DNA of 64,000 bases from Octopus sinensis (GCF_006345805.1 NC_042998.1:69316001-69380000); one strand, 5' to 3'. Numbered from the stretch's first letter, positions 5,369-61,565 are shown. A program made the numbers and translations. The notes: generated by a model not told the origin, from the letters alone.

Positions 5369-5526
5369 GGCACAGGAGTGGCTGTGTGGTAAGTAGCTTG
5401 CTTACCAACCACATGGTTCTGGGTTCAGTCCCACTGCGTAGCACCTTGGGCAAGTGTCTTCTACTATAACCTTGAGCCAACCAAAGCCTTGAGAGTAGAT
5501 TTGGTAGATGAAACTGAAAGAAGCCC

Positions 5527-5530
<4 letters not shown>
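5369..5530 (+). mobile_element. SINE family B head + CORE-like segment
   Basis: ggagtggctgtgtggtaag..gggttcagtcccactgcg..ccttgggcaagtgtcttctactatag. Confidence 0.85.
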
Positions 5531-5574
<44 letters not shown>

Positions 5575-5580
<6 letters not shown>

Positions 5581-5825
5581 ATTTACAAAAAAACAAAAGA
5601 CGAAGATGGGTGTGTAAACAACAAACAGGTGTATTAGCTTAACACTCAAGAAGTGAGAAAGTCTTTTACGTTTTGAGTCTGTGCTCTTCGACAGAAAGGA
5701 ACATAGAAATAAACAGGGAGAGAAAACAGAAAAAGGTTTAGTGGCTAGCTATCTATCATGGCAAATGCCAGGCAGAGGGGTCACACAGGAGAACTAGGAA
5801 GAAGGGGAGATAAGGTAGTGGAGAT
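5575..5825 (-). mobile_element. short hammerhead-bearing element (family E) in (TA)n
   Basis: Homologous to 9052-9235 and 47958-48166. Flanked by TA tracts on both sides. Confidence 0.7.
5663..5698 (-). ncRNA. degenerate type I hammerhead ribozyme motif
   Basis: Reverse complement: cttt-ctgtcga-a-gagc acag actc-aaaac gta-aaag. Stem I cttt/aaag. G12 and one stem II pair are mutated. Confidence 0.5.
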
Positions 5826-5847
5826 TATATATATATATATATATATA

Positions 5848-6420
5848 GGTGCAGGAGTGGCTGTGTGGTAAGTAACTTGCTTCCTAACCACATGGTTCTG
5901 GGTTCAGTCCCATTGCATGGCACCTTGGGCAAGTGTCTTCTACTATAGCCTTGAGCTGACTAAAGCCTTGAGAGCGAATTCAGTAGACAGAAACTGAAAG
6001 AAGCCACTTGCTTGGCATTAAAGTTGCTCACATACACTTCTGACTCAAGGATGTGCTCTCTCCTTGCTTCCTCTCGCCTCTCTCTCTTTTCTACACATAC
6101 TTGTTTTTTTTTGGTGGGGCACATAAAAAAACACCTGTGCTGGTGCCACATGAAAGCACCCGTGCTGAGGCAAGGTAAAAGGTACCTATGCTGGCGTTAT
6201 GTGTAAAGCACCCATATGGGTGCCATGTAAAAGCTGGGGGTCACATAAAAAGCACCTAGTATTCATTGTAAAGTGTTTGGCATTAGGAGGGGCATCCAGT
6301 CATAGAAAATATACCAAAAATGGCAAATGGAGCCTGGTGCAGCTCTCTAGCCTTGCCAGCTTCTGTCAAACTGTCCAACCCATGCCAAGATAGATAATGA
6401 ACTTTAAATAATGATGATGA
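5848..6420 (+). mobile_element. chimeric SINE: family B head + RTE-type tail (family D)
   Basis: B head to ~6005, then aaaagcacc repeats and ggcatccag..gagcctggtgcagc..aaactgtccaacccatgcca..atgatgatga. Confidence 0.7.
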
Positions 6421-8309: not shown

Positions 8310-8770
8310 TTCATCATCAGCATCATTGTTTAACGTCCGTTTTCCATGCTGGCATGGGTTGGACGGTTTCCCTGAGGACTGGCAAGCCAGGAGGCTGCAC
8401 CAGGCTTCAATTTGATCTGGCAATGTTTTTACAGTTGGATGCCCTTCCTAACGACAACCACTCCAAGAGTGCTTCTACGCTCCACTGGCATGGGTGCTAT
8501 TTGCATGTCACTGGGGGGCTTCTATGTTCCACTGGCATGGTGCTATTTGCATGTCACTGGGGGGCTTCTATGTTCCACTGGCATGGGTGCCATCCATGTG
8601 TCACTGGGGTGTTTCTAAGTTCCAGCATGGGTATCATTTGCATGCCTCTGGGATGCTTCTACATTCCACTGGCATGGGTGCCATTTACGTGCCACTGGAG
8701 TACTTCTACGTTTCACCAACACAGGTGCCACTGGGGTACTCTTATGTTCCACCAGCACAGGTGCCGATTT
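8310..8770 (-). mobile_element. family D (RTE 3'UTR-like tail) with ~21-bp internal tandem repeats
   Basis: catcatcag..tttaacgtccgttttccatgctggcatgggttggacgg terminus, and repeated ttccactggcatgg units at 8480-8760. Confidence 0.75.
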
Positions 8771-9051
8771 ATATATATATATAGGTATTTATGTATATGT
8801 ATCTGTAATGACTGCAATTTTTCTCAGCTTGATGGGTCTTCTTCTCAAGCATAATATAATGCCAAACTGCTTAGATTATAATTTTATAATTTATAACTGC
8901 TCAGATTTATAATTTTATTAATATATAATTAGAATGCTCTTGCACCTTGAGCAAGTGTCTTCTACTATAGCCTTGGGTTGATCAAAACCTTGTAAGTGGA
9001 TTTTGTAGATGGAAACCGGAAGAAGTCCATTATTTATATATATATATATAT

Positions 9052-9235
9052 AAGGAGAGTTTACGAAAAAAACAAAAGATGAAGACAGGTGGTGTACAAA
9101 ACAAACAGGTCTATTAGTATAACGCTCAGGAATAGAAAGTCTTTTACGTTTCAAGCCTATGCTCTTCTACAGAAAGGGACACAGAAAAAACAAGGAGAGA
9201 AAAAAATGTGTGTAGTGGCTAACAATCTATCATGG
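9052..9235 (-). mobile_element. family E hammerhead-bearing element
   Basis: Homologous to the 5575 and 47958 copies and abuts (TA)n. Confidence 0.75.
9141..9176 (-). ncRNA. type I hammerhead motif, core variant CUGUAGA
   Basis: Reverse complement: cttt-ctgtaga-a-gagc atag gctt-gaaac gta-aaag. GUA cleavage triplet, palindromic ACGU stem III. Confidence 0.6.
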
Positions 9236-9873
9236 TTGGTATAGTCATAAAAATCAATATTTATTAGAAGCAATATCATGAGGTTTGGTATTTCATTCAT
9301 TTTCTATGGTGTTCTGCCCTTCTATAATGTTTGTGTGTTTGTGTTTGTCCCCCCAACATTGCTTGACAACCGCTGCTGGTGTGCTTACATCCCCGTAACT
9401 TAGTGGTTTGGCAAAAGAGACCAATAGAATAAGTACTAGGCTTACAAAGAATAAGACCTGGGGTTGATTTGCTTGACTAAAGGCGGTGCGCCAGCATGGC
9501 TGCAGTCAAATCACTGAAACAAAGGAATAAAAGAATAAAAAAGAACATATATATATGTGCATGTGTTTGTGTGTATGTAGAAGTACATCTACACACCCCA
9601 CATCCACAGACTTATATATTTGTGTGCCTGCTTGTGCATGAGAGAGATCCAGAGAAAGGGAAAGAGAGAGATATTGTTTAATACGATTGTTGTTCACTAT
9701 TTACGGTCAATGATCTTTTCGGTGAGTCATGAAAAGAATCGCAAATGTGTTACAACAGATTTATGACCAATAGTTTCAGTTTAAACAAATGTCCTACAAA
9801 TATATGTCAGTTATTGAATACTAGCTTCACCTTTCTTTCGCTCATTATAACACACACTCACATACATGTAGAC

Positions 9874-10196: not shown

Positions 10197-10341
10197 ATTT
10201 AGACGGAAGAAATAGGAAGTTGTGTCCCATAACAGTATGGCTGTGTTGTTAAGAAGTTGACTTCAGAACTACATGGTTATGTACATTATTTACATTATTT
10301 ACATTTGATGGATATTTGTCCTCATCTTGTTCGTTGTTAAC

Positions 10342-10385
10342 ACAACGTTTCAGCTGATATACTCTCCAGCCTTCATCATGTGTCT
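10342..10385 (-). ncRNA. hammerhead motif in the inverted arm (C3 mutated to A)
   Basis: Reverse complement: gacac-atgatga-a-ggctg gagagtatat cagct-gaaac gtt-gtgtt. Confidence 0.6.
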
Positions 10386-10437
10386 TGGGGAAATTTCGAA
10401 TTGGGGTTCCCATTCCTAAGGTTCGAAATTTCCCTGA

Positions 10438-10483
10438 GACACCTGATGAAGGATGGAGGGTATATCAGCCGAAACGTTGTGTT
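10438..10483 (+). ncRNA. minimal type I hammerhead ribozyme
   Basis: gacac-CTGATGA-a-ggatg gagggtatat cagcc-GAAAC GTT-gtgtt. Stem I gacac/gtgtt, palindromic ACGU stem III, GUU triplet, one stem II mismatch. Confidence 0.75.
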
Positions 10484-10962
10484 AACAACAAACTAAATGA
10501 GGACAAATATCCATCAAATGTAAATAATGTACATAATTCGTCATCTCTTAAATATAGAACTGTACATGGTTATGTGTTCAATCCTCTTATTGAAACCCTT
10601 AGATAAGTGTCTTGATTTAATCCAGCAGTTCTTAACTGTGCCTCCCAGGGCTGCATGCATCCCCTGACCTTCTTCCCTCTATAAATATTATAAATTTTTC
10701 ATTAATTGATTTGTGTTTCCCTTTTTTTAGTGCAGCCCCCTAAAAAAGTCCAGGTTTTGGATCTGGTCTGGATATCAAAATGAGAACTACAGGTTTAACC
10801 AAAAGCTTGTCTGTAAAATTTAGTAAACCAAGTGACCATTCCTGTTCAGGGTCAGAAAGTATCTCAGCTCAAAACAGTTGCTGATTTTACAGAAAACATA
10901 GTTGTTCTGTGTGAGAGTATTTCTCACATATCTGAAATATATTCTTCACAACAGTTTTGTGA

Positions 10963-13519: not shown

Positions 13520-14454
13520 CCTTAAGATGGGGGAACGTGCAATGAAGATAGTTTGATTTTTGTCTCAAGTATAGTAACAACTCTAAGCATGTTTCACTGT
13601 AATTTGACCTCATTTGTCTACTCTTATCATGATTTGCCAGCTCTTTTCCAGGCCAATGGAATAAAATATAGTGTTTGTGTGAATGAACGGTGATAGGAGT
13701 GACAACTATAAAACTATAAATAAACGGAAATTTTTCAGGGGTGCCTTCTTCATGAAAAACACATAGTTAAATAGAGTAATATAGCGAGCAACTTGTTTAA
13801 ATATATATCTTTCTTTTTGTAATTAATTAAAATTGCATCCTTTGTGTAGAAAAATATATTAAATTTCACAATTAATTCCTGCAAAGCAAGTCAGTCGTTG
13901 ATTGTTTGTTAAACAATTTCATCACAGTATTGAATGGCTAAGAATGTGTTTACAATAACTAACCCTTCTTTCAGTACATTAACCATCTTCTCGCTGTCAC
14001 CACTTTCAGTATATATATATACTCACACACGCACAAACATATATACACAGAGGCACACCTAGGCATATGGACACCACCTGTTATGCCTTAAAAACATCCA
14101 ACAAGCATGCTTCGTCATCCAAATGTAACTGAGATATATCACATTTCCCTCACACTTCTTTCATGTCTATCAGGCTTGACAGATTAATTTCATAAAAAGG
14201 AGTATGTAATGAAAATTTTGCTAGTGAATGTGTATATATACATATATGTATGTATCTCTATCTGTCTGTCTGTGTGTGAGATGAATGAGCAAAAACAAGA
14301 AAACACAATTAGAGGGACAAATTTTAACACAGGTGTCATAAGTCTAATGCTTAAAAGGAAAGAGAAAGATCGTAAACATTTCGGACATTTGTCCATCATC
14401 AGAAAAATAAAAAAAGGAGGAAAAGTGGTAGAAAAAAAGGGAAGAAAAGGTAGT

Positions 14455-17144: not shown

Positions 17145-17650
17145 TAAGCACCAGTCAGTCATGGTCGATGCCAGTGCCTCAACTGGCACCCGTGTCAGTG
17201 GCACGTAAAAAAACACCACCCGAACGTAGTTGATGTCAGTACCCCCGACTGGCTCCTGTGTCAGTGGCACATAAAAAGCACTACCCGTAGGTGGTTGATG
17301 CTGATACCCCCTGATTGGCACCCTTGCTGGTGGCACGTAAAAAGCACCATCCAAACGTGGTCAATGCCAGTGCCTCCTGATTGGCTCCTGTGTCAGTGGC
17401 ACATAAAAAGCACCATCCTAACGTGGTCGATGCGGGTGCCCACTGACTGGCTCCCGTACTGGTGGCACGTAAAAAGCACCCACTACACTCTCGGAGTGGT
17501 TGTCGTTAGGAAGGGCATCCAGCTGTAGAAACATTGCTAGATCAGACTGGAACCTGGTGCAGCTCATTGGCTTGCCAGTCCTCACTCAAACCGTCCAACC
17601 CATGCCAGCATAGAAAGCGGAGGTTAAACGGTGATGGAGATGATGATGAT
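17145..17650 (+). mobile_element. family D tail with 66-bp VNTR (5 units)
   Basis: tggcac(g/a)taaaaagcac at 17199, 17265, 17331, 17397 and 17463. Ends ..gttaaacggtgatggagatgatgat. Confidence 0.8.
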
Positions 17651-18965: not shown

Positions 18966-19129
18966 AGGCACAGGAGTGGCTGTGTGGTAAGTTGCTTGCT
19001 TACCAACCACATGGTTCCGGGTTCATTCCCACTGTGTGGCACCTTGGGCAAGTGTCTTCTACTATAGCCTTGGGCCAACCAAAGCCTTGTGAGTGGATTT
19101 GGTAGACAGAAACTGAAAGAAGCCTGTCG

Positions 19130-21420: not shown

Positions 21421-21827
21421 AAATTGTTGATTTTGTTGTATTGCATTATGGGAAATTGCTGTAGAGGGGGCTTCCCCCACCTGTACAAAACTATCGCCTG
21501 GTACATGTAGGAATAATTATTTTTTAATTCTCATCCGACTTCCACCACATTTCAGCGACACAGAGTGTATGGATAATCAAAAGCCCGTTTATTTTCATTC
21601 ATTTTATATCAACTATTCTGTAAACAATGGCGTGCATTAGTTGCAAGTTTACAATCGACTCGTCACTGCTTCACTGCATTTAGAACGGTGAGAGTGACAA
21701 AAGAACGTCTGTGAAGTTCGAGCGGAACAAATACCACCAATGTAATTTTAGGTTGAAAAGACTGGCTTTCCACATTATTTCGGAGAAAGGTAAACACATA
21801 CACACGTACACCCCTACATACATATAT

Positions 21828-22491
21828 GTGGATGGTAGTGCATGGCCGTTTTTAGTTCGTGGAGTGATTCATCCACTTGATTCCGACAACGATCGAGACT
21901 CCGACCTGTTAACTCACACGTCGATTAGTGCTTTTCCAGTGGCGTATTGCTCCACGTGTTCGTCGTTAGTTCTGCGCATAAGCTGAGGTTTCACTCACTC
22001 CTCATTCTATAATCTCTGTTGCGGTGAACACCGAGTGGTGGTCGATATTGGTCAAGAATGTACTATGGTGGTGACGATGGTAACACGTCTACAGAAGACT
22101 GTACAAGGCGGCTCGATAATAGGGTGTGTGTGTGTGTGTGATATGCCCTTAGATGCCTGTAGCCGCACATACGCTAAATTATCAGCGGATAACTTTATTT
22201 AAACCGGAGGGGATTGGAAAAATCACTGAACCACCAATTGTGAAAGGGATCAGTATGTACAACGAGGAATTCCCATTAGGCGCAGATCACAACCCCCCGA
22301 CAATCCCCTTCTTGCTCTTTGTACACACAAAACCTGCTTCTACCGATCGAACGATTCGATGAAACGCGAGTTTGCAAGCTATGGCGGTGTTTCCTATCGA
22401 TTGATTCATTCGGTCCATTGTTGTTTTTAATGGCCGGAAGAAGATGATCGAATCCGATCACTTAGAGGAATTAGAAGTTGTAACATGGTTT
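21828..22491 (+). pseudogene. decayed 18S rRNA 3' portion (pseudogene)
   Basis: Ordered conserved blocks: gtgcatggccgtt..agtt..tggag, gattccgacaacgatcgagactc, atgcccttagatg, aacgaggaattccc, ctttgtacacac, ctaccgatcgaa, tagaggaa..aagttgtaacatggttt. Confidence 0.85.
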
Positions 22492-24074: not shown

Positions 24075-24226
24075 TAGTAGTGTGGTAAAAAGTTTGCTTC
24101 ACAACCATATGATTCTCAGTTCAGTCCCACTGCATGGCACCTTGGGCAAGTGTCTTCTACTATAGCCTCAGGCCGACCAAAGCCTTGCGAGCGGATTTGG
24201 TAGACGGAAACTGAAAGAAGTCCATC

Positions 24227-43021: not shown

Positions 43022-43559
43022 CAAAGATTATTTGCCAATATAACATGGCAGTCATAGTTTAGAACGAATGTTACTGTAATTTAGCCCCCAGGAGACATCT
43101 TCTCCGGCTTGCTATACGACACGATCTGTGGCCTTATATTTTCGAACAAGGGAATCTTGCACCCCAACTCAGCTCAAAACAATATTTGTGTGTCGTGATT
43201 TCCGGGTTATTTCCCTTCATCAGCACAATAATTGTTCGGCTAGAGGTGGCGGTGCCAAATTCCCGTTCGAAATATATATTTTCAAAGTGACGACTAAGTC
43301 ACCGATCTATAAATTAGAAAATTACACATATTGTTTTGAGCTGAGTATGGGGGGGGGGGGGGCTAGATTCCCTTGTTCGAAAATATAAGGACACAGATCG
43401 TGTCGTATAGCCAACTGGAGACGATTCTCCTGGGGCTAAATTACAGCAACATTTGTCCTAAATTACCAGGACTGCCATGTTATGTTAGCAAATAATCTTT
43501 ACTCCAAAGTACTGTTGCTGAATATCTCTCGTTGTGAGATTTACAAATAGTAATATTCT
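43022..43559. mobile_element. fold-back element (family H): ~165-bp inverted arms around a hammerhead-containing centre
   Basis: Arms at ~43024-43190 and ~43322-43501, extra tail to 43559. Possible 11-bp TSD aatctttgaaa at 43010-43020 and 43560-43570. Confidence 0.75.
43186..43228 (-). ncRNA. type I hammerhead motif
   Basis: Reverse complement: ttgtg-CTGATGA-a ggg aaataa ccc g-GAAA tc ac ga c a-cacaa. Stem I ttgtg/cacaa. U16.1 appears mutated to C. Confidence 0.6.
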
Positions 43560-44637: not shown

Positions 44638-45332
44638 CAGTGTACCACCCCTAATTTATCTACGCCTTAGATGATTACAGAATAAAATAAAGCCCTAGAA
44701 TAAAATATAAAATTTTAAAAATGTGTGACGACTTACTTTCAAATAATATGAAATATATTTGCACTAAACGAAATATTTACATTATCAACACTTTGAAGAC
44801 ACGTCAGCATCTGGTGATTATACATCCAGTGAAGAAGCAGGCCTCCACGTGGTGGCTCCTCTGGCTAGAACCTGCATTCAAACTCCCCCTCAAGCTGTTG
44901 CCATATAAGAGGAAATATCTGAAAGTGTCGTCTAAGCTAGAATATTCTGTTAGTAATTTTTACACCGTTTTTATGTTCTTCTTGCCTTCTAGAAAGAGGC
45001 GGTAACATACGCCAATTTTACCTCATCCTGAAGATGTGACTAAAAAACGTTGAGAATGTATTTCTGGATTTTAGTGAACAAACTGTCAGGAGATCGTAAA
45101 GAAATATTAAGTATTTTGAAAAAAAATCTGGAACTAAACTGTTTTTTCTTATTTCAAATTAGTGTGCGTGCGCATGTGTATGTGTGTATACGTTGCAGGT
45201 ATGTATACGCGTGTGTGTGTTTGAAAAGTGTTTTACGAGGTAAAACTTGAAATCAGAGCTAACTCTCTATATTACAAATTTGTCTCCACTGCCATTGTCA
45301 TGCCATTGTATTTGTTTAAGGAAGAGAAACAG

Positions 45333-45368
45333 TCTTAACGTTTTGGACGTTAGTCCTTCACCATAAGA
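45333..45368 (-). ncRNA. degenerate type I hammerhead motif
   Basis: Reverse complement: tctt-atggtga-a-ggac taac gtcc-aaaac gtt-aaga. Stems I and II are perfect, the core is decayed. Confidence 0.45.
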
Positions 45369-45967
45369 AAAGTAAAGGAATGTAAAAGAAAAGTAATTAT
45401 GAAAAGAGAAAAAATGCACGAGGTGATAGGGAGTCAAGTGAGCCTGCAGTTCTATGGAAGGGATTTAAAAAGGAGGAAGAAATGTAGTGTGTGCACTGGT
45501 AGAAGTACATCTGTGTTTTGAGATAAGCATAAGGGTGAATACTGTGTGTGTGTGGATGAACTAGAAGTCCCAGTCAACATGATCTTCACAATATATCTGA
45601 ATCTACTATAGGAAGCAATGGAATCGCCAACATCAAGAAAGATTTCCTTCGGTATGTGTGCGTATTCTCATTCGATGGGTATCCTCAATTTGTTGACGGT
45701 TTTATAACAAAGTTTAACTTTTAAGTAAACTCATAACAAAAGTCTAGCGGTGTGAAGTGCGGTAAACACAAAAGACATTCTACTGAACCTCTTTGTCTAA
45801 TTCACCTATTTGGCAAAAGGTAGACCTTTATATTGCTATGGTAGTGGATTAGTGGGGGTGGGGGAGGTGCCCCTTCTTGTTGGAAATAAATTCTCCATTC
45901 TCAAAGTCCTCTTGAATGCTTGGTGCAACAGATTATCACAGCAAGTTCAAGTAAATGTAACCAATTG

Positions 45968-46368
45968 TAGGAGTGGCTGTGTGGTAAGTAGCTTGCTTAC
46001 CAACCACATGGTTCCAGGTTCAGTTCCACTGCGTGGCGCCTTGGGCAAGTGTCTTCTACTATAGCCTCGGGCCGACCAAAGCCTTGTGAGTGGATTTGGT
46101 AGACGGAAACTGAAAGAAGCCTGTCGTATATATATGTGTGTGTGTGTGTGTTTGTGTGTCTGTGTTTGTCCCACCCCCAACATCGCTTGACAACCGATGC
46201 TGGTGTGTTTACGTCCCGGTAACTTAGCGGTTCGGCAAAAGAGACCGATAGAATAAGTACTAGGCTTACAAAGAATAAGTCCTGGTGTCGATTTGCACGA
46301 CTAAAGGCGGTGCTCAAGCATGGCCACAGTCACATGACTGAAACAAGTAAAACAGTAAAAGAGAGAGT
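45968..46368 (+). mobile_element. SINE family B (young, full length)
   Basis: Near consensus. Confidence 0.9.
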
Positions 46369-47957: not shown

Positions 47958-48166
47958 ACGGGAAGCTTTATGAAAATAGACAAAGACGAAGGCAGGTGGA
48001 AAACAAACAAACAATTGTATTAGTATGGCGCTCAGGAAATATAAATAAAACAAGTCTTTAACGTTTCGAGCCTACGCTCTTCAACAGAAAGATACACAGA
48101 GAGAAAAAAAAACACAGAAAGAAGGAGAGAAAAAAATGCGTGCAGTAACTAACAATCAACATGGCG
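47958..48166 (-). mobile_element. family E hammerhead-bearing element flanked by (TA)n on both sides
   Basis: Homologous to the 5575 and 9052 copies. Confidence 0.8.
48055..48092 (-). ncRNA. type I hammerhead motif, core variant CUGUUGA
   Basis: Reverse complement: tcttt-ctgttga-a-gagc gtag gctc-GAAAC gtt-aaaga. Stems I and II are perfect. Confidence 0.65.
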
Positions 48167-48954: not shown

Positions 48955-49150
48955 ACCCCCCCCCCCAAAAAAAAAAAAACGAAGAAAAAACAACAACGAG
49001 AGCACGTGGTATGTGCAAAACATTAAAAGACGCTCAGGAAAGGAAAGAAAGGTTGTTTAACGTTTCGAGCAAAGCTCTTCTTCAAAAACAGGAGACAGAG
49101 GAAAGTCCAAGAGAAAAGGAAGATGGAGGGAAAAAAATCGCCAACAGTTC
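48955..49150 (-). mobile_element. E-related hammerhead-bearing element next to (TA)n
   Basis: Shares gacgctcaggaa..tttaacgtttcgagc with family E, otherwise diverged. Confidence 0.65.
49054..49090 (-). ncRNA. type I hammerhead motif (UUGAAGA core)
   Basis: Reverse complement: tgttt-ttgaaga-a-gagc ttt gctc-GAAAC gtt-aaaca. Stems I and II are perfect, C3 is mutated to U. Confidence 0.65.
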
Positions 49151-49653
49151 TTTCGACAATGGGCAAGAGAAGCATGTAGCAAAATAAATGAATGAATATA
49201 AATAAATAAATAAATAAATAAATAGGTCTTTCTTGGGAATCCCGTTAAAGAGTGACAGAGGGAGAAATATTTAATGTGTAAGCCTTGTGGGACGGTTTTC
49301 TTTCAACTAAATCTTCAATTTGATATCGTCTGTCAATTTACTTTAACTGCGTTGACCTGGAAACTGTCTAATTTCGGTTTTTCATTTCTGCTTTCCACAT
49401 TCTTAAATGTGGTTTATTCCACCACACCCAAATACGAAGACATGCAAACATCCTGCTGGGTTCACACAGAATAGTACAACCACAGCGTTATGTTTTGCTT
49501 CATGCACTCAAAGACACGCACACACACACACACACACATACACACACACACACACACACATACACACACACAGTCACGCGGACGTACACATAAGCACACG
49601 GATACACATGCGTGCGCACATTCATATATAGGCGTGTGTGCACACTGCAGCTA

Positions 49654-56593: not shown

Positions 56594-56776
56594 GAGTAAA
56601 GATTATTTGCCAACATATTTTCGAACAAGGAAGTTTGGCGTCCCCACTCTGCTTAGAGCAATATCTGCACACCAATGGTTTCTAGGTTATTTCTCTTCAT
56701 CAGCACAGAATAACTGCTCGGCTAGAGATGGCGCCACCAAACTCTTGTTTGAAATATATATTTTTCAAAATGTCAC
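56594..56776. mobile_element. family H element, single-arm deleted copy
   Basis: Homologous to 43022-43270. 13-bp TSD ataatttataatg at 56581-56593 and 56777-56789. Confidence 0.7.
56665..56708 (-). ncRNA. type I hammerhead motif (family H)
   Basis: Reverse complement: ctgtg-CTGATGA-agag aaataa ccta-GAAA cc att gg t g-tgcag. Stem II is weakened and H17 is G. Confidence 0.5.
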
Positions 56777-56882
56777 ATAATTTATAATGTTATATATAAT
56801 GTCCAAAAAGCATGCACTAGTTAGTCATCAGATACGAAACGACGTCATCGATATGCTATCTTTAAGGTAGCATGTTCGTGCA

Positions 56883-56920
<38 letters not shown>

Positions 56921-57009
56921 TAAGGAAAATTTTTTTAAAAAAACAGAATGCTCAAATGAAAGAAAATTTTAATAAAATGAGAAAATGATAAAATATATAA
57001 ATATATATT

Positions 57010-57050
57010 TATTCAACCGGTTTTCGTCATTGTATGACTTGTCAAGAATA
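57010..57050 (-). ncRNA. degenerate hammerhead in the PLE 3' pseudo-LTR
   Basis: Reverse complement: tattc-ttgacaa-gtca tacaa tgac-gaaa accggtt-gaata. Stems I and II are perfect, palindromic stem III, two transitions in the core. Confidence 0.6.
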
Positions 57051-57682
57051 TTTATGTTTTAAGAAGTTATTTTAAAAATTAGAAATGGGAAAAAAAGAAA
57101 ATTGCATTGTTTTTTGTAAAAGAATAATGATAAAAATGTACAAAAATTAAAAAATAAGTTCTCCGATACATTGTGAGTTCGTTGTGTATCTTGAGTTTTA
57201 TGGTTGTTTACCAAAAAATTACCTTGAGGTGTTAAGATCCAAAGGGATTAAGAGCATGTGATGTGTTGTGTTGTTAAATTCAGCATGTTGCAGGACAGGA
57301 AGTAGTAGTAATTGTGGTCCTGGTTCTTCAGTTCCTGTGTTGTGGGTAAGGGGAGACAACTCTTTTGAGTTCTTCAATAAAACCCAAATTATAAAACTAT
57401 CATTTTAGCTTCATTTGCATTATCTTTTTTATATAATTGCTTGTTAACTTAACTTTCAGATTTTAACACTTTATTTATATTATTTTCTAATAATATAAAT
57501 CTGCATAGACAATTGCATTTCAAATTGTCATATCATTTATAATAAAAATGATAGTAATAACAACAATAGTAAAAATGATATTTAAAGAATATAAGTTTTA
57601 GCTTGAAGTGATGAATACATGGTATCTTTATATATTTGTGTTAGTCCATCCATGAAGAGTGAGGTAGAGAAAGGAAGTTTGA

Positions 57683-58207
57683 TCAACGAGGAGTTTGCAT
57701 ATTAAGTTGTGTTTGGAATTTTTCAATAAAGAGATTCTCCTTGTTAATTCTCTCCTGTGTGGTGATCCCGTCTTTACATTGGTAGAAGGGGAATATATAG
57801 AATTTGGGGTTTAAGTCTTTAGCACATGAGTCTAAGTGGTCACTCAGTGGAATTTGTCGGTATTCCGGAAGGTTTATTTGTTCTTTATGCACCGTTACTC
57901 GTTTACGTAACGGGAGACTCGTTTGTCCAACATAATTATGTTGGCAACCAGCGCATGTGAGAACGTAGATAAGGTTCTCGGAGGAACAGGAGAAGTTAGT
58001 CTTGATTTTAAACTTCGTACCTTGTTTGAAGGTAAATTCAGAGCCTTCAAGTAGAAAGGGGCAGGTACCACAGTTTGAGCGTGCACATTTTTTTACTGTT
58101 GGGGGTGGATGTGGTGTGTGAAGTTTGGCATTTGTCAAGAGTTTTTTTAAAGATTTGTGTTGCCTTTTGCATTTGAGGATTTTGTGTGTATTTATAATGT
58201 TTTTCAT
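57683..58207 (-). CDS. PLE linker + GIY-YIG endonuclease
   Basis: KKCARSNCGTCPFL..CSSENLIYVLTCAGCQHNYVGQTSLPLRKRVTVH..ERINKENLFIEKFQTQLN. Confidence 0.9.
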   Translation of the reverse strand: MKNIINTHKILKCKRQHKSLKKLLTNAKLHTPHPPPTVKKCARSNCGTCPFLLEGSEFTFKQGTKFKIKTNFSCSSENLIYVLTCAGCQHNYVGQTSLPLRKRVTVHKEQINLPEYRQIPLSDHLDSCAKDLNPKFYIFPFYQCKDGITTQERINKENLFIEKFQTQLNMQTPR

Positions 58208-58399
58208 TTTTGGGTCTGTTGACAGTAGACTGAGGTTTTGTATGATTGTGGTGCATGCTTCGATATTTTTGGGGTTGTGGGTGGAAATGTATGGAAGTAT
58301 TTTGAGGTTGTGTGTGGTGTTAGGTTGGGTGGTTTTCAGTGTAGTGTTGTCTAGTTCTTTGGCGCGTTTTATTCCATACTCTATAAGGGTGGAGGGATA

Positions 58400-59990
58400 T
58401 TGACGTTGTAATAGTGTTTTTTTGAGGTCTTGAAGGCGTATTTCTCGTGTTTTTGGATCCGAGACAATGGTGCATACCCTTTTAGCTAAATTGAAAGGGA
58501 TATTTGTCTTGGTGTGTTTTGGGTGGCATGAACTAAAGAGGAGGTATTGTTGTGAGTCTGTAGGTTTGTGGTAGATGTCTGTTATGATTTGGTTCTTAGG
58601 TGTTTTTATATTAGGAGATCAAGGAATGGGAGATGATGTTTGCTTAATTCCATAGTGATTGGATGGGTTGGGATGTATGTTGTTTAGTATGGTTTTGAAT
58701 TCCAGGAGTTTTTCATAAGGTTCTTTCCATATGATGAAACAATCATCTAAATACCTTTTCCAGTTTTCCATTAGGTAGGTGTGGAAAACATGTCCAAATT
58801 TCTGGCTTGATATTTCATAGAGTGACAGTTCGAAGTAACCCATTATGAGGTTCGCAAGGACTGGTGCAGCCTTGGTACCCATCGCAATGCCACATTTTTG
58901 ACGGTAGTGTGTGTCGTCGAAGAGAAAAAAATTGTTTGTCAGAATGAACTTAAGAGATTCTGTAATAAAAGACTTGTTAATGCGGTCAGGGAATGTCTCT
59001 GGGTGTTTTTCTAGCCAGAAGTCAATTGCCTCTATACCATACTCGTGTGGAATGTTGGTGTAGAGGTTGATGACATCAAAGGATACCAGGAGTGCCTCCT
59101 CGTTAACTGTTTTCGGGAGGTGTTTGAGCATGTCCAGATCATCCCTAATGAAACTTTTGATGTGGGTAAGGAAAGGTTTCAAAAGGATGTCTAGGAAGTT
59201 ACTCAGGCGGTGTGTTTCACAGGAGGTACCAGCCACGATGGGCCTTAGTTTTAGGTCCTCCGGTGCTTTGATGTTGATGTGGATGTCAGTGGAGAGTTTG
59301 CAGGCTTCGGTGATGTATTTGTTTATGGATTTTAGGAAGACCATAAAAAAGGCTGGGCTTGCATTTGAAAATGGTGATATAATCCCTTTCTTTTTCTGTG
59401 AGTCCCTGACCGTGTTGGCGTATGAGTGTGGTGAGGTTTCTGATTGTTTTTGCTGTTTGTAGTTGTTAATAACCTCATAGAAAATGTTATTGTTAAGCAT
59501 GGAGAACACTAGGTGTTTATAAAATTCCGTGTCCATAAGGACCACAGCACTCCCTTTGTCCGCTTCTTTGATGGTGAGGTTTTTATCCAGTTGTATGTCA
59601 CGTAGGTTTTCCCATTCTTCCTTACTGAAATTGGATTTTACCTTGGTTTTGCTTGGGGTAAAGGGGAGACTCTGGATGTGTTTACAGAAATCGTCCAGTG
59701 TTTTATTTCTCCCTTTTGGTGGTAGGAAGTTGCTTTTATTTCTGATCAATGAATCGTCCCCATTGTTGATATCTGTCAAAGCTTCTGTTAGGCGAAGTTT
59801 TCTGCAGAATTCAGAAACGTCATCCTTGACCTCCGGGGGGTTGGGTGTTCTTGGGGTGGGTGTGAATTTCAAACCTCTTGCTAGGATGTTGATTTGGGTT
59901 GGTGTCAGTGTTTTGCTGGAGAGATTTATAATTTTTGTTTTCTTATTTTGGGTCTGTGTTAGCGGTGGTGTTTGTATTTTTCCCCTCTGT
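58400..59990 (-). pseudogene. PLE reverse transcriptase, frameshifted
   Basis: ADKGSAVV, LRPIV, FDVINLYTNIP, GIAMGT, RYLDD, TDIYHKPT..YL..SCHP. FYGLPKIHK lies in a shifted frame (~59330-59450), and there is a further +1 shift near 58660. Confidence 0.92.
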
Positions 59991-60646
59991 CTAAAAAATG
60001 GTTGTTGAGGTAAGGGGTGTATTCTTTGTTAAAGTTCTGGTGTATGTGTAGGAGTGTTTTTGGGTGGGGAGGTTGGAGGGGGGTAGGTAGTTGTCGTATT
60101 TGTGTTGGTATGGGATGCGATGGTGTAAGGATTTGTGAGAAATGCGATGGGTTTGTGGGTGTGTGACTGGTAGATTGTATGGGGGGATGTAGGGGGGTAT
60201 GTAGTTGTGGTGATTGGGTTCGTGTGGGATGTGAGGGTTTGGAGATCTGTAGGAGATGTGGTAGGAATGTGGTTGTTGGATGGGTGGACTATAGGGGGTT
60301 CGTTGGGTGGGTCTTATATGTATCGGTGTGGGTAGGATGCCTTGTTTGTTATTAGTGTGAAGGAGGGGAGCCTTGAGGGGGGGATAATTTCTAGTGTATG
60401 GGAGGTTCTTGAAGGTTCTAATCGGTGGGGGAGGGGTGTTAGAGTGATTGGAAAACCAGGTTTTGTGGTGGGTCTGTTTGAGATGTTGTTCGGGGGGGAA
60501 AAGGTTTTTTATATGGTTGGGGGAGGTTGTGTCCTGTTAGGAGGGGGTTTGGAGAGTATGTGTATTTGAGGTGCGGTTTGGAATGGTGTTTATGGGGTAC
60601 AGTGGAAGTCTGTGTTGTAGGTACTTTTATGAATGGGTTTTTGGAT

Positions 60647-61062
60647 TTATGGTTTAATATGAATTGTGTTCATAGTTGAGGAAGAAATCTTTGTTGTTTT
60701 CCCAGCGTTTGAGGGAGGTTCGTTCTTCCTTTTCACATTCATCTTTCCATAGTTTAATAACAAGTTCGAGGGCTGTTCGTTGGTGTGTGAGGTTAGTTCT
60801 AGAAGTATCTCATCGTCTATTTTTGTGTATTTTTGTTCGTGGTTTTCTGCTCTGAGTTTTAGAAGTTCTACTTCGGTTTTCATTTTTTCCAATGTTAGTT
60901 TTTCTCTTAGGGAGCGTTGTTTTTCAGGTTCGTCTGGGATGTGTTTGATTTGGAATTTTCGGGGTAGTATGATAGGGGAGGAGTTTAACCATTTGTCGTA
61001 AATTTCAGCTTTGTTTTGGTTTTTGAGCATGTTCCAGAAGAGAAGTTTTCTGTTGTGTAGTT
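60647..61062 (-). CDS. PLE N-terminal region (frame open up to the TA junction)
   Basis: KLHNRKLLFWNMLKN..YDKWL..LPRKFQIK..EKMKTEVELLKLR, followed by a Thr/Pro/His-rich low-complexity stretch. Confidence 0.6.
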
Positions 61063-61063
61063 T

Positions 61064-61099
<36 letters not shown>

Positions 61100-61565
61100 T
61101 ACATACCTACATAAATGAGTACATATGTATAGTCTTTGAGAGGAGATTTATCAAAAGTGCAGAATGACTTTTTGATCTTTTTCCCAAAATGTAACTGCTA
61201 GTCTTCAATGCATACAAACTTTCTTTGAGATCGCATTAAATTTTCGTGTCAGGTTACGCAACCCATATCATTGGCCTTGTACATGTGTGTGTGTGTGTGC
61301 ATGCTTGAATGCATGTGTGCATGTATCTATGTAACGTATGTGTTTGTATAAATTGTATTTATGTATGTGTATACGCATGTATGTATACATGTATGTATAT
61401 ATACATGTATGTAATGCTTGTACGCATGTATGCACATACGTTACTGTGTGTGTACATTGTATGTATGTTTGCATGTATTTATGTAAGCATACATATGTAT
61501 GTATCGATATGCTTGTATGTACGTATGCATTCCTATGTCTATCTATGCATATATGCATGTACATA

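What the first reader, a model, noticed from the sequence alone, without database searches (positions are those of the whole stretch)
56888..61100. Neptune-like PLE in (TA)n as the likely engine of a hammerhead-element ecosystem
Seen: an RT/GIY-YIG element bounded by TA tracts, with its hammerhead ~90 nt from the 3' TA junction. The short elements at 5575, 9052, 47958 and 48955 show the same geometry (hammerhead 88-99 nt from a TA junction, same polarity) but encode nothing. Established: PLEs carry hammerheads in pseudo-LTRs, Neptune-type elements have a Cys-rich RT-EN linker, and retrozymes are non-autonomous hammerhead retroelements. Inference: a microsatellite-targeting PLE system with several ribozyme-bearing parasites (families E, H and the fold-back type), possibly undescribed in cephalopods.
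Basis: partly seen in the sequence, partly recalled or inferred. Interest (0 to 1): 0.85.

Follow-up and report, generated by a model that had tools for sequence, protein, structure and literature searches.

The report
Dead octopus Penelope retrotransposon with hammerhead hitchhikers
This is a decayed Penelope-like retrotransposon of an octopus, inserted in a (TA)n microsatellite and carrying a small hammerhead ribozyme motif near its 3' end. Around it lie short non-coding elements built the same way, which makes this a good local example of biology already described in other animals, not a new kind of system.

Summary
Window 56919-61065 (minus strand) is a 4.1-kb Penelope-like element (PLE). 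[quoted passage not shown]

Its 3' UTR holds a PLE-type minimal hammerhead (57050-57010) with the known U3-A8 core variant. The predicted cleavage site is 96 nt from the TA junction. Relatives keep this motif with compensatory changes.

At least six ~200-nt non-coding "E" elements carry a different minimal hammerhead 92-104 nt from their 3' ends. Nearly all abut (TA)n, and all lie on the minus strand.

- This PLE copy is dead: it has four frameshifts plus in-frame stops.
- E elements share architecture, but no detectable sequence, with its 3' UTR. If a PLE moved them, it was another lineage.
- The main E subfamily has an A6-to-U change in the catalytic core.

(TA)n targeting by Neptune, Naiad and Hydra PLEs, PLE minimal hammerheads, solo and inverted copies, and PLE-derived non-autonomous hammerhead elements are all published. 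I found no cephalopod description. Verdict: a new member of a known kind, of modest interest.

The parts
56888..56918 (.). Perfect (AT)15.5 microsatellite abutting the 3' end of the PLE
   Evidence: TRF, 100% matches
61066..61096 (.). Perfect (TA)15.5 microsatellite abutting the 5' end of the PLE; same length (31 bp) as the 3' tract
   Evidence: TRF; these tracts are the only terminal repeats of the element
56919..61065 (-). Penelope-like element, 4147 bp, near full length, non-functional copy
60647..61030 (-). ORF1 N-terminal part (127 aa from the ATG at 61030, helical and charged). It is conserved in an O. sinensis relative and in ORF1 of bivalve-type relatives.
   Evidence: 62% aa identity to L004:9109-9480; 41% over 90 aa to L008 ORF1, E=3e-19
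60029..60646 (-). Pro/Thr/His-rich low-complexity stretch in the same frame, broken by TAA stops at 60649, 60592, 60511, 60316 and 60031. It contains a 114-bp tandem duplication at 60065-60276.
57683..59879 (-). RT-EN reading frame. Motifs: DKG at 59569-59540, RPIVAG at 59245, YLDD at 58756-58733. It is broken by two compensating frameshift pairs (~59449 with ~59318; 58660 with ~58605) and by a TGA at 58621-58619 in the naive frame.
   Evidence: blastx to P0010, P0016 and P0003 over their full length; motif alignment; frameshift-aware alignment; coordinates
58058..58087 (-). Cys-rich linker CARSNCGTCP (CX4CX2C) between RT and EN
   Evidence: Conserved C..C..C columns in the alignment with 8 homologues; coordinates
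57701..57976 (-). GIY-YIG nuclease core (NLIYVLTCAGCQHNYVGQT ... R ... H ... KENLFI ... LN) with two Cys inside the core
   Evidence: Pfam PF01541, E=1.9e-4; alignment
57010..57050 (-). PLE-type minimal type-I hammerhead, U3-A8 core variant: uauuc UUGACAA GUCAU-aca-AUGAC GAAA accgg UU^gaaua
   Evidence: Only perfect descriptor hit in the window, 0.03 expected; conserved with covariation in relatives; predicted double-hammerhead dimer, -20.1 against -8.8 kcal/mol for two monomers
56919..57014 (-). 96-nt 3' tail between the predicted cleavage site and the (TA)n junction, ending ...TTTTCCTTAC
5563..5762 (-). E element (subfamily E-a). Hammerhead-like motif 5699-5661 with CUGUCGA (A6 to U). The 3' end runs through a (TC)n stretch into (TA)17 at 5529-5562, which is the tail of a plus-strand SINE.
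   Evidence: (82 bits)
9053..9237 (-). E element (E-a). Motif 9176-9141 with CUGUAGA. The 3' end abuts (TA)9, which is the tail of a plus-strand SINE at 8942-9025.
   Evidence: (87 bits)
47958..48163 (-). E element (E-a), flanked by TA tracts on both sides. Motif 48092-48055 with CUGUUGA.
   Evidence: 92 bits
48955..49165 (-). E element (E-b). Motif 49090-49054 with UUGAAGA. The 3' end abuts (AT)12.5.
   Evidence: 74 bits
14240..14416 (-). Canonical CUGAUGA, bulged U, helix II GGAC/GUCC (compensatory relative to GAGC/GCUC), CpG-decayed. It ends in a compound CA/GACA/TA microsatellite.
   Evidence: 75 bits
45302..45378 (-). Decayed E-like hammerhead region found only by the covariance model
   Evidence: 41.9 bits, E=6e-7; sequence
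10286..10560 (.). Head-to-head inverted pair of min-hammerhead units: 10438-10483 (+) with canonical CUGAUGA, and 10384-10339 (-) with A3. Flanked by the direct repeat ACATGGTTATGT (10271-10282 and 10564-10575). Not in (TA)n.

Best explanation
Window 56919-61065 is an old, inactivated, near-full-length copy of an octopod Penelope-like retrotransposon of the Neptune type. [quoted passage not shown] It integrated into a (TA)n microsatellite, presumably by target-primed reverse transcription.

Its 3' UTR carries a PLE-type minimal hammerhead with the U3-A8 core variant, a one-base-pair helix III, and a self-complementary AACCGGUU that can pair only between two copies.

The element ends 96 nt downstream of the predicted cleavage site. 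I infer that this fixed spacing marks the site where the PLE enzyme starts cDNA synthesis inside its RNA. In the Poseidon element PAc, synthesis starts 85-92 nt downstream of the hammerhead cut site.

The ~200-nt E elements carry a related but distinct min-hammerhead followed by a tail of the same length, and they insert at (TA)n. They are best read as non-autonomous derivatives of the 3' (pLTR-like) module of a different PLE lineage, copied in trans by a PLE enzyme.

Shown here: the anatomy, the lesions, hammerhead conservation and covariation, the TA junctions, and the discreteness of the E units.

Inferred: trans-mobilisation, the cause of the spacing, and whether the nuclease or annealing of an RNA tail chooses (TA)n.
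For: Protein identity and domain order.

Dead copy.

Hammerhead:
- Descriptor enrichment.
- In nine related copies, positions 3 and 8 are always Watson-Crick (U-A, A-U or C-G). Helix I keeps 3-5 pairs with unrelated sequences, for example UAUUC/GAAUA, AUAUC/GAUAU, GCUAA/UUAGC and AUCCU/AGGAU. Helix II differs in sequence but pairs in 8 of the 9 (no helix II could be drawn for L008)..
- Dimer folds give the double-hammerhead architecture.

E family:
- Eight copies align.
- Helices I and II are 92% paired, with three compensatory pairs. None of 500 shuffles reaches the observed score, and slid controls are 23-50% paired.
- The covariance model finds 9 copies in 212 kb of octopus DNA.
- Three E-a copies begin at the same CCATGATAGAT.

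TA junctions:
- Both PLE ends, and 4 of 6 E 3' ends in the window, lie directly on TA tracts (a fifth ends in a compound TA-containing microsatellite), against a 1.8% background.
- Relatives do the same: L002 PLE, the inverted copies in L004 and L003, L001, the E copy in L006, and L002_4857.

Literature:
- The (TA)n bias of Neptune, Naiad and Hydra PLEs, and the linker hypothesis (PMC8557442).
- Min-hammerhead features, the U3-A8 variant, and solo and inverted copies (PMC4209133).
- Internal RT initiation, and hammerhead catalysis being dispensable in vitro (PMC11167929).
- pLTRs alone suffice to mobilise foreign sequence (PMC3846280).
- Retrozymes as PLE derivatives (bioRxiv 10.64898/2026.07.22.740005).
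Against: - No autonomous PLE with an E-like 3' end was found among the five PLE lineages sampled.
- Only about 212 kb of octopus DNA could be searched, and only four E-a copies are in hand.
- Three E-a copies and the L006 copy have U at the invariant A6. On established mutagenesis (my knowledge), that should cripple catalysis, so E-a is a hammerhead by descent, not necessarily by function.
- Rfam covariance models do not recognise any of these motifs.
- The tail length differs in relatives: about 62 nt in the L002/L004 lineage and about 165 nt in L001. The ~95-nt spacing is therefore lineage-specific, not universal.
- No self-cleavage, transcription or empty-site data exist here.
Confidence: 0.7

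Rival explanations
1. The E elements are not a dedicated non-autonomous family. They are extreme 5'-truncated 3' ends of an unsampled autonomous PLE lineage.
For: PLE insertions are commonly 5'-truncated. L002 and L003 start at about residue 490 of the protein. The L006 E copy is itself truncated about 70 nt upstream of its hammerhead. Cervera and de la Pena read most solo min-hammerheads as truncated PLEs (PMC4209133).
Against: Three of four E-a copies start at the same position, CCATGATAGAT. All window copies are about 185-265 nt. No PLE coding sequence adjoins any E copy.
Confidence: 0.22
2. This PLE lineage itself mobilised the E elements.
For: Same strand, the same 88-99-nt geometry and the same (TA)n junctions. 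There is also a weak resemblance in the last ~35 nt: a T-rich run, an A-rich patch, then YCCTTA.
Against: The hammerhead subtype differs: U3-A8, no bulge and CCGG, against a bulged A, GAGC/GCUC and CG. No blastn similarity exists outside low-complexity sequence. This copy is dead.
Confidence: 0.08
3. The (TA)n tracts are the elements' own microsatellite tails, or are captured by annealing of a (UA)n RNA tail. They are not the preferred cut site of the nuclease. E could even be a LINE-dependent SINE that happens to contain a hammerhead relic.
For: The window holds about 17 copies of a ~157-nt SINE, most with their own (TA)n or (TG)n(TA)n tails. E5575 and E9052 lie tail-to-tail against such SINE tails. 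(TA)n is its own reverse complement, so annealing would work in either orientation.
Against: TA tracts flank both ends of the PLE, E47958 and E5575, which a 3' tail alone cannot explain. Hammerheads are a hallmark of PLEs and retrozymes. The (TA)n bias is documented for three PLE clades (PMC8557442).
Confidence: 0.12
4. The hammerhead-like motifs are chance matches in AT-rich DNA.
For: There is no Rfam hit, and bare CUGANGA...GAAA strings are common (15 in the window).
Against: Descriptor enrichment of 1 against 0.03 and 4 against 0.43. Covariation in both families. The same motif type with a canonical core occurs in unrelated invertebrate-derived contigs. The Rfam positive control fails.
Confidence: 0.02

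Closest known systems
Neptune-clade Penelope-like elements (Arkhipova 2006, as summarised in PMC8557442 and PMC3846280)
   Same: A single RT-EN polyprotein with PLE motifs (DKG, YLDD), a C-terminal GIY-YIG nuclease with internal Cys residues, a CX2-5CxxC linker, insertion into (TA)n, 5'-truncated and head-to-head inverted copies in relatives, and a hammerhead in the non-coding terminus.
   Different: Clade membership was not tested by phylogeny, and Nematis also has a (reduced) linker. This copy has no pseudo-LTR. An upstream ORF1 with a low-complexity region is present, as in the bivalve-type relatives L007 and L008.
PLE minimal hammerheads (Cervera and de la Pena 2014, PMC4209133)
   Same: Short helix I (4-5 bp), G10.1-C11.1, helix III reduced to 1-2 bp with a palindromic loop, and predicted action as dimers. 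The U3-A8 core covariant matches. E elements and the fold-back have the nucleotide between A9 and 10.1. Solo copies and inverted pairs are widespread.
   Different: Octopod relatives also show A3-U8 (L002, L004, L008) and one G3-C8 candidate (L004). I did not find these named as natural variants in the searchable literature. The E-a subfamily has U at A6.
Poseidon PAc of Anolis (Frangieh et al. 2024, PMC11167929)
   Same: The hammerhead lies a fixed ~90 nt upstream of the point where cDNA synthesis starts (85-92 nt there; 96 nt for the PLE and 92-104 nt for E here). Targets are AT-rich.
   Different: PAc belongs to another clade with no Cys-rich linker, and its hammerhead overlaps the ORF start inside a pLTR of tandem copies. 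Here the hammerhead is in a 3' UTR of a single unit, and nothing was measured.
Metazoan non-LTR retrozymes (PMC7229834; bioRxiv 10.64898/2026.07.22.740005)
   Same: Short, non-coding, type-I hammerhead-bearing elements, proposed to derive from PLE termini and to depend on PLE enzymes.
   Different: Retrozymes are tandem arrays of ~170-400-nt monomers that yield circRNAs. E elements are solitary with one hammerhead each, so they cannot excise a unit by self-cleavage. They resemble SINE-like solo units more closely. From memory, Schistosoma Sm-alpha is the nearest analogue.

Membership tests
Penelope-like element, EN+ (C-terminal GIY-YIG) | Reverse transcriptase with PLE/TERT-type motifs (DKG upstream motif, YxDD) | tested here: met
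   RVT_1, E=1.1e-7. KEADKG, RPIVAG and RYLDDCFI align with eight full-length homologues. The homologues carry DUF8422 + RVT_1 + HTH_animal + GIY-YIG.
Penelope-like element, EN+ (C-terminal GIY-YIG) | GIY-YIG nuclease fused C-terminally to RT in one frame | tested here: met
   PF01541, E=1.9e-4, 22.1 bits, just under the 22.6 cut-off. The Y..YVGQT, R, H, KE..FI and LN columns are conserved, in the same frame as RT.
Penelope-like element, EN+ (C-terminal GIY-YIG) | Pseudo-LTRs (partial tandem) flanking the ORF | tested here: not met
   The only terminal repeats are the TA tracts. Relatives L003 and L004 do show the typical head-to-head inverted partial copies.
Neptune clade | Cys-rich CX2-5CxxC linker between RT and EN, plus Cys/His residues inside the EN core | tested here: met
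   CARSNCGTCP at 58087-58058, and LTCAGCQH...H...C in the EN core. The criterion is taken from PMC8557442 and PMC3846280.
Neptune clade | Phylogenetic placement of RT with named Neptune references | not testable with these tools
   No named reference sequences were available. Supplements are not held and Arkhipova 2006 is not held.
Neptune clade | Insertion bias for (TA)n | tested here: met
   Both ends lie on perfect (TA)15.5. Relatives end at (TA)n. The background is 1.8%.
Hammerhead ribozyme, PLE-type minimal type I | Catalytic boxes C3-U4-G5-A6-N7-G8-A9 and G12-A13-A14, with H17 | tested here: inconclusive
   The PLE has UUGACAA, the published U3-A8 covariant, with GAAA and U17. E-b, the fold-back and E14402 have CUGAUGA or near it. 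E-a has CUGUNGA, with A6 replaced, which departs from the definition.
Hammerhead ribozyme, PLE-type minimal type I | Helices I and II supported by covariation; palindromic helix III or loop 3 | tested here: met
   E family: 92% paired, 3 compensatory pairs, 0 of 500 shuffles. PLE lineage. AACCGGUU and AACGUU are palindromes, and dimer folds support pairing in trans.
Hammerhead ribozyme, PLE-type minimal type I | Match to Rfam hammerhead covariance models | tested here: not met
   No hit at the gathering score or at E<=10. The canonical-core copy at 10438-10483 is also missed, so the test lacks power for this subtype.
Hammerhead ribozyme, PLE-type minimal type I | Self-cleavage | not testable with these tools
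   Needs in vitro transcription of monomer and dimer constructs.
Metazoan non-LTR retrozyme | Tandem repeats of hammerhead-bearing monomers | tested here: not met
   TRF reports no arrays at any E position. The covariance model finds single, dispersed copies.
Metazoan non-LTR retrozyme | Expression as circular RNA | not testable with these tools
   No transcriptome data are available.
tRNA-derived SINE | tRNA-like head | tested here: not met
   ARAGORN finds no tRNA-like sequence in the window. This is a weak test, since decayed heads escape it.

The most novel reading that the evidence does not exclude
E-a is a cephalopod-specific, SINE-like parasite of PLE machinery that amplified after its hammerhead lost the invariant A6. 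That would be natural evidence that ribozyme catalysis is dispensable for PLE-type retrotransposition.

Octopod PLE hammerheads tolerate every Watson-Crick pair at core positions 3 and 8 (C-G, U-A, A-U, and possibly G-C).

The (TA)n tails of the genome's dominant SINE serve as landing pads for PLEs and their parasites, making a self-reinforcing insertion niche.
Probability: 0.3. Interest if true: 0.5.

Novelty: new member of a known kind. Interest (0 to 1): 0.3.

Why it matters
This gives a clean, compact example in a cephalopod of the link between PLEs, hammerheads and microsatellites. It also offers three small testable points.

- Core pair 3-8 covaries among close relatives, which is natural support for the C3-G8 pair.
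- A subfamily spread with a core mutation that should abolish cleavage. This agrees with in vitro data that hammerhead catalysis is not needed for insertion.
- SINE (TA)n tails may feed PLE targeting.

None of these changes the current picture of PLE biology. The value lies mainly in annotating octopus repeats, where many short families remain 'unclassified SINEs' (PMC13282606), and in choosing constructs for ribozyme and nuclease assays.

Tried and rejected
- **Rfam scans** (gathering and E<=10, whole window and sub-ranges). No hammerhead was found. I rejected this as evidence of absence because the canonical-core control is also missed. The many mir-297/466 'hits' are TA/TG microsatellite artefacts.
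- **A strict canonical descriptor without the 9/10.1 bulge**. It found nothing and was replaced by the published PLE min-hammerhead features.
- **My first reading that the RT-EN frame had a single stop.** The frameshift-aware alignment corrected it to four frameshifts.
- **The idea that the insertion is exactly one unit of a tandem or circular template.** Rejected, because L004 has at least 135 nt more 5' UTR with no resemblance to the tail.
- **Search for an autonomous partner of E.** I used blastn, the covariance model and the descriptor over five PLE lineages in L001-L008, and found none.
- **Metagenome pattern scan.** It returned E-type canonical hammerheads in invertebrate-like contigs, but no RT nearby.
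- **A common structure in the E tail.** RNAalifold predicts only helix II.
- **The 'H' repeats (56600-56760 and 43140-43390).** They have CUGAUGA...GAAA at a hairpin apex, but G at position 17 in one copy and no helix III in the other. I did not accept them as hammerheads.
- **The CUGAUGA at 56831.** It has no GAAA partner in range on the same strand, so I rejected it.
- **Neptune reference sequences and Arkhipova 2006.** Neither was obtainable.

Full report
**What is there.** TRF reports two perfect 31-bp TA tracts at 56888-56918 and 61066-61096. The 4147 bp between them read as one element on the minus strand.

A single frame runs from the first base to a TGA at 57685-57683. Its C-terminal ~730 codons align end to end with intact ~725-aa proteins from molluscs and mollusc-derived metagenome contigs. 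The identities are 43-55% in blastx and 57% in BLASTP for the best full-length relative, and one frame covers the whole alignment. Pfam gives RVT_1 (E=1.1e-7) and GIY-YIG (E=1.9e-4, just under the cut-off).

An alignment with eight homologues shows these motifs:
- PLE motifs KEADKG, RPIVAG and RYLDDCFI.
- A CX4CX2C linker at 58087-58058.
- A GIY-YIG core with two internal Cys residues at 57976-57920.

The closest named proteins come from Octopus bimaculoides, O. sinensis and Argonauta, so the window is octopod DNA.

Upstream, a 127-aa ORF1 starts at 61030. It is 62% identical to the matching region of an O. sinensis copy (L004:9109-9480). It is also related to ORF1 of two-ORF bivalve-type relatives, at 41% over 90 aa.

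**The copy is dead.** A frameshift-aware alignment to P0010 and P0003 finds two compensating frameshift pairs: ~59449 with ~59318, and 58660 with ~58605. They scramble the FYGLPKIHK and LPFLD motifs. The naive frame also has a TGA at 58621-58619. Five TAA codons interrupt ORF1 and the low-complexity region. There is no pseudo-LTR, because the TA tracts are the only terminal repeats.

**The hammerhead.** Rfam finds no hammerhead at the gathering score or at E<=10. It also misses a copy with a perfect CUGAUGA...GAAA core at 10438-10483. Rfam is therefore uninformative for this helix-III-less type.

I used the published features of PLE minimal hammerheads instead (PMC4209133):
- A short helix I.
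- An optional nucleotide between A9 and 10.1.
- A G10.1-C11.1 pair.
- A palindromic helix III.
- The U3-A8 covariant of the core.

With these, the window has one perfect hit, the PLE motif at 57050-57010: uauuc UUGACAA GUCAU-aca-AUGAC GAAA accgg UU^gaaua. It has four one-mismatch hits. Markov shuffles give 0.03 and 0.43.

Homologous motifs occur in every relative I could fetch, all with GAAA(A)CCGGU.
- Positions 3 and 8 are U-A (window, L003 twice), A-U (L002, L004 twice, L008) or C-G (L001, L007). They are always Watson-Crick.
- Helix I keeps 3-5 pairs with unrelated sequences.
- Helix II changes sequence but still pairs in eight of the nine copies; none could be drawn for L008.
- Two copies of the motif are predicted to fold into the double-hammerhead architecture, with AACCGGUU pairing in trans. 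The energy is -20.1 against -8.8 kcal/mol for two monomers.

The motif is therefore a genuine member of the PLE min-hammerhead class. Cleavage itself is untested.

**The TA junctions.** Only 1.8% of window positions lie within 5 nt of the edge of a perfect (TA)>=5 tract. Yet both PLE ends, the 3' ends of E9052, E47958 and E48955, and the 5' end of E47958 sit exactly on such edges. E5575 reaches one through a short (TC)n run, and its 5' side lies about 60 nt from another.

Relatives end the same way:
- L002 PLE: (TA)6(GA)n.
- The L004 inverted copy: (TA)12.
- The L003 inverted copy.
- L001.
- The E copy in L006: (TA)11.
- L002_4857.

**The short elements.** They also align with a fifth window copy (14240-14416) and with three copies in O. 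sinensis loci. A covariance model built on the hammerhead plus proximal tail finds nine copies in 212 kb of octopus DNA, including a decayed one at 45302-45378.

Helices I and II are 92% paired with three compensatory pairs. None of 500 shuffles reaches the observed score, and slid controls give 23-50%.

The motif is cuuu CUG(A/U)NGA a GAGC-nnnn-GCUC GAAA cg UW^aaag. It has the bulged nucleotide and the G10.1-C11.1 pair typical of PLE min-hammerheads.

Two subfamilies exist.
- E-a (5575, 9052, 47958 and L006) has U in place of the invariant A6.
- E-b and E14402 keep A6.

Three E-a copies begin at the same CCATGATAGAT. No PLE coding sequence adjoins any copy. This argues for a discrete unit of ~185-206 nt, not random truncation, although four copies is a small sample.

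The E elements are solitary, have no tRNA-like head by ARAGORN, and are old: 65-85% identical within E-a and 44-71% otherwise.

Their predicted cleavage sites lie 92-104 nt from the 3' junction, against 96 nt for the PLE.

**Relation between the PLE and E.** The two hammerhead subtypes differ, as described above. blastn finds no similarity between E and the 3' UTRs of the five PLE lineages sampled: window/L003, L002/L004, L005, L006 and a fragment in L002. Only a weak, low-complexity resemblance exists in the last ~35 nt.

This PLE lineage is therefore not shown to be the 'engine'. If a PLE moved E, it was probably another lineage.

A metagenome pattern scan found the E-type motif with a canonical CUGACGA core in about ten invertebrate-like contigs. 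None has an RT nearby. The motif type is thus widespread, and E-a's U6 is a derived state.

**Other hammerhead-bearing repeats.** The 'fold-back' at 10286-10560 is a head-to-head inverted pair of min-hammerhead units, flanked by a direct repeat and not lying in TA. This arrangement was described for PLE termini and for dual min-hammerheads (PMC3846280, PMC4209133).

The 'H' repeats (56600-56760 and 43140-43390) have the two conserved boxes at a hairpin apex but fail the descriptor.

Further candidates, including a G3-C8 variant, occur in L004 and L005.

**Context.** The window holds about 17 copies of a ~157-nt SINE, most with (TA)n or (TG)n(TA)n tails. E5575 and E9052 lie tail-to-tail against two of those tails. 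Many TA tracts here therefore come from SINEs and may act as landing pads. This also keeps open a rival reading, in which annealing of a (UA)n RNA tail, and not nuclease specificity, selects (TA)n.

**Comparison with what is known.**
- (TA)n insertion bias is published for Neptune, with the Cys-rich linker proposed as the cause, and for Naiad and Hydra PLEs (PMC8557442).
- Min-hammerheads in PLE termini, the U3-A8 variant, massive numbers of solo copies, and inverted pairs are published (PMC4209133).
- In Poseidon PAc, cDNA synthesis starts 111-118 nt into the ORF while the hammerhead cuts at +26, which is 85-92 nt downstream of the cut. Hammerhead mutants still insert in vitro (PMC11167929). 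This offers a ready explanation for the ~95-nt spacing here, and for the spread of a U6 subfamily.
- pLTRs alone can mobilise foreign DNA (PMC3846280).
- Retrozymes have been proposed to be PLE-derived non-autonomous elements, shown mainly in vertebrates (bioRxiv 10.64898/2026.07.22.740005).
- PLE expansions in Octopus are recorded without this detail (PMC13282606).

**Verdict.** The system is a new member of a known kind. The only mildly new details are A3-U8 (and possibly G3-C8) core variants, an A6U subfamily that still spread, and SINE tails as targets. All three need genome-wide and bench tests.

Noticed in passing
window 5563-5762, 9053-9237, 14240-14416, 45302-45378, 47958-48163, 48955-49165, 56919-61065: All seven hammerhead-bearing elements (six E-type and the PLE) lie on the minus strand. 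The two-sided chance is about 1 in 64. This may reflect antisense bias inside a plus-strand transcription unit. (TA)n itself is symmetric and cannot set orientation.
   Followed up: no
window 56888-56918 and 61066-61096: The two TA tracts flanking the PLE are both perfect and exactly 31 bp. This could be a long target-site duplication or a coincidence. The tracts around E47958 (99 and 35 bp) and E5575 (34 and 22 bp) are unequal.
   Followed up: partly
window, e.g. 5373-5525, 5849-6005, 8942-9025, 18971-19124, 24080-24220, 45966-46121: About 17 copies of a ~157-nt SINE ending ...gaaactgaaagaagcc, most followed by (TA)n or (TG)n(TA)n tails. Two E elements are inserted tail-to-tail in such tails, so SINE tails may supply the (TA)n targets.
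   Followed up: partly
window 10286-10560: A head-to-head inverted pair of min-hammerhead units. The plus-strand copy has a fully canonical core (gacac CUGAUGA a GGAUGG..UCAGCC GAAA cg UU^guguu). The pair is flanked by the direct repeat ACATGGTTATGT and is not in TA. It probably represents a different PLE lineage.
   Followed up: partly
window 56600-56760 and 43140-43390 (minus strand): Two copies of a fold-back repeat with CUGAUGA...GAAA at the hairpin apex. One has a 3-bp helix III but G at position 17, and the other has lost helix III. It is unclear whether this is a degenerate hammerhead or a MITE with chance boxes.
   Followed up: partly
L002:12130-12165, L004:12555-12600 and 8090-8045, L008:835-875; L004 ~23018 (minus): Min-hammerheads with A3-U8, and one with G3-C8 (7-bp helix I, 5-bp helix II). 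With C-G and U-A, all four Watson-Crick pairs at core positions 3-8 then occur in mollusc PLE-type hammerheads. A full-text search for 'A3-U8' found no paper.
   Followed up: partly
L003:9690-9910 and L004:8000-8940: Inverted partial 3' copies lie head-to-head immediately upstream of the PLE copies, the complex arrangement typical of PLEs. L002:8041-9196 is a fragment of a second, distant PLE (36% aa identity) next to the main copy.
   Followed up: no
L007:556-605 and L008:835-875: In the two-ORF bivalve-type relatives, the GAAACCGGU hammerhead lies about 110 nt upstream of ORF1. In the octopod copies it lies in the 3' UTR. The two placements would coincide in a tandem arrangement.
   Followed up: no
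L011, L017-L023, L027, L028 (metagenome contigs): An E-type hammerhead with a canonical or near-canonical core (CUGACGA or CCGACGA, then a GAGC uaac GCUC GAAA cg UW^agc) occurs in about ten contigs that look like invertebrate host DNA. No RT ORF lies nearby.
   Followed up: partly
window 60065-60276: A 114-bp tandem duplication (1.9 copies, 73% matches) lies inside the Pro/Thr-rich low-complexity part of the PLE upstream region.
   Followed up: no
window 21732-22314: A sub-threshold match to eukaryotic SSU rRNA (45.4 bits against a gathering score of 50, model positions 1165-1655). It may be an rRNA-derived fragment.
   Followed up: no
window 8469-8716 and 17162-17480: Two GC-richer minisatellites (47/91-bp and 66/132-bp units) with related-looking CACTGG/GGCAC motifs. 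Origin unknown.
   Followed up: no
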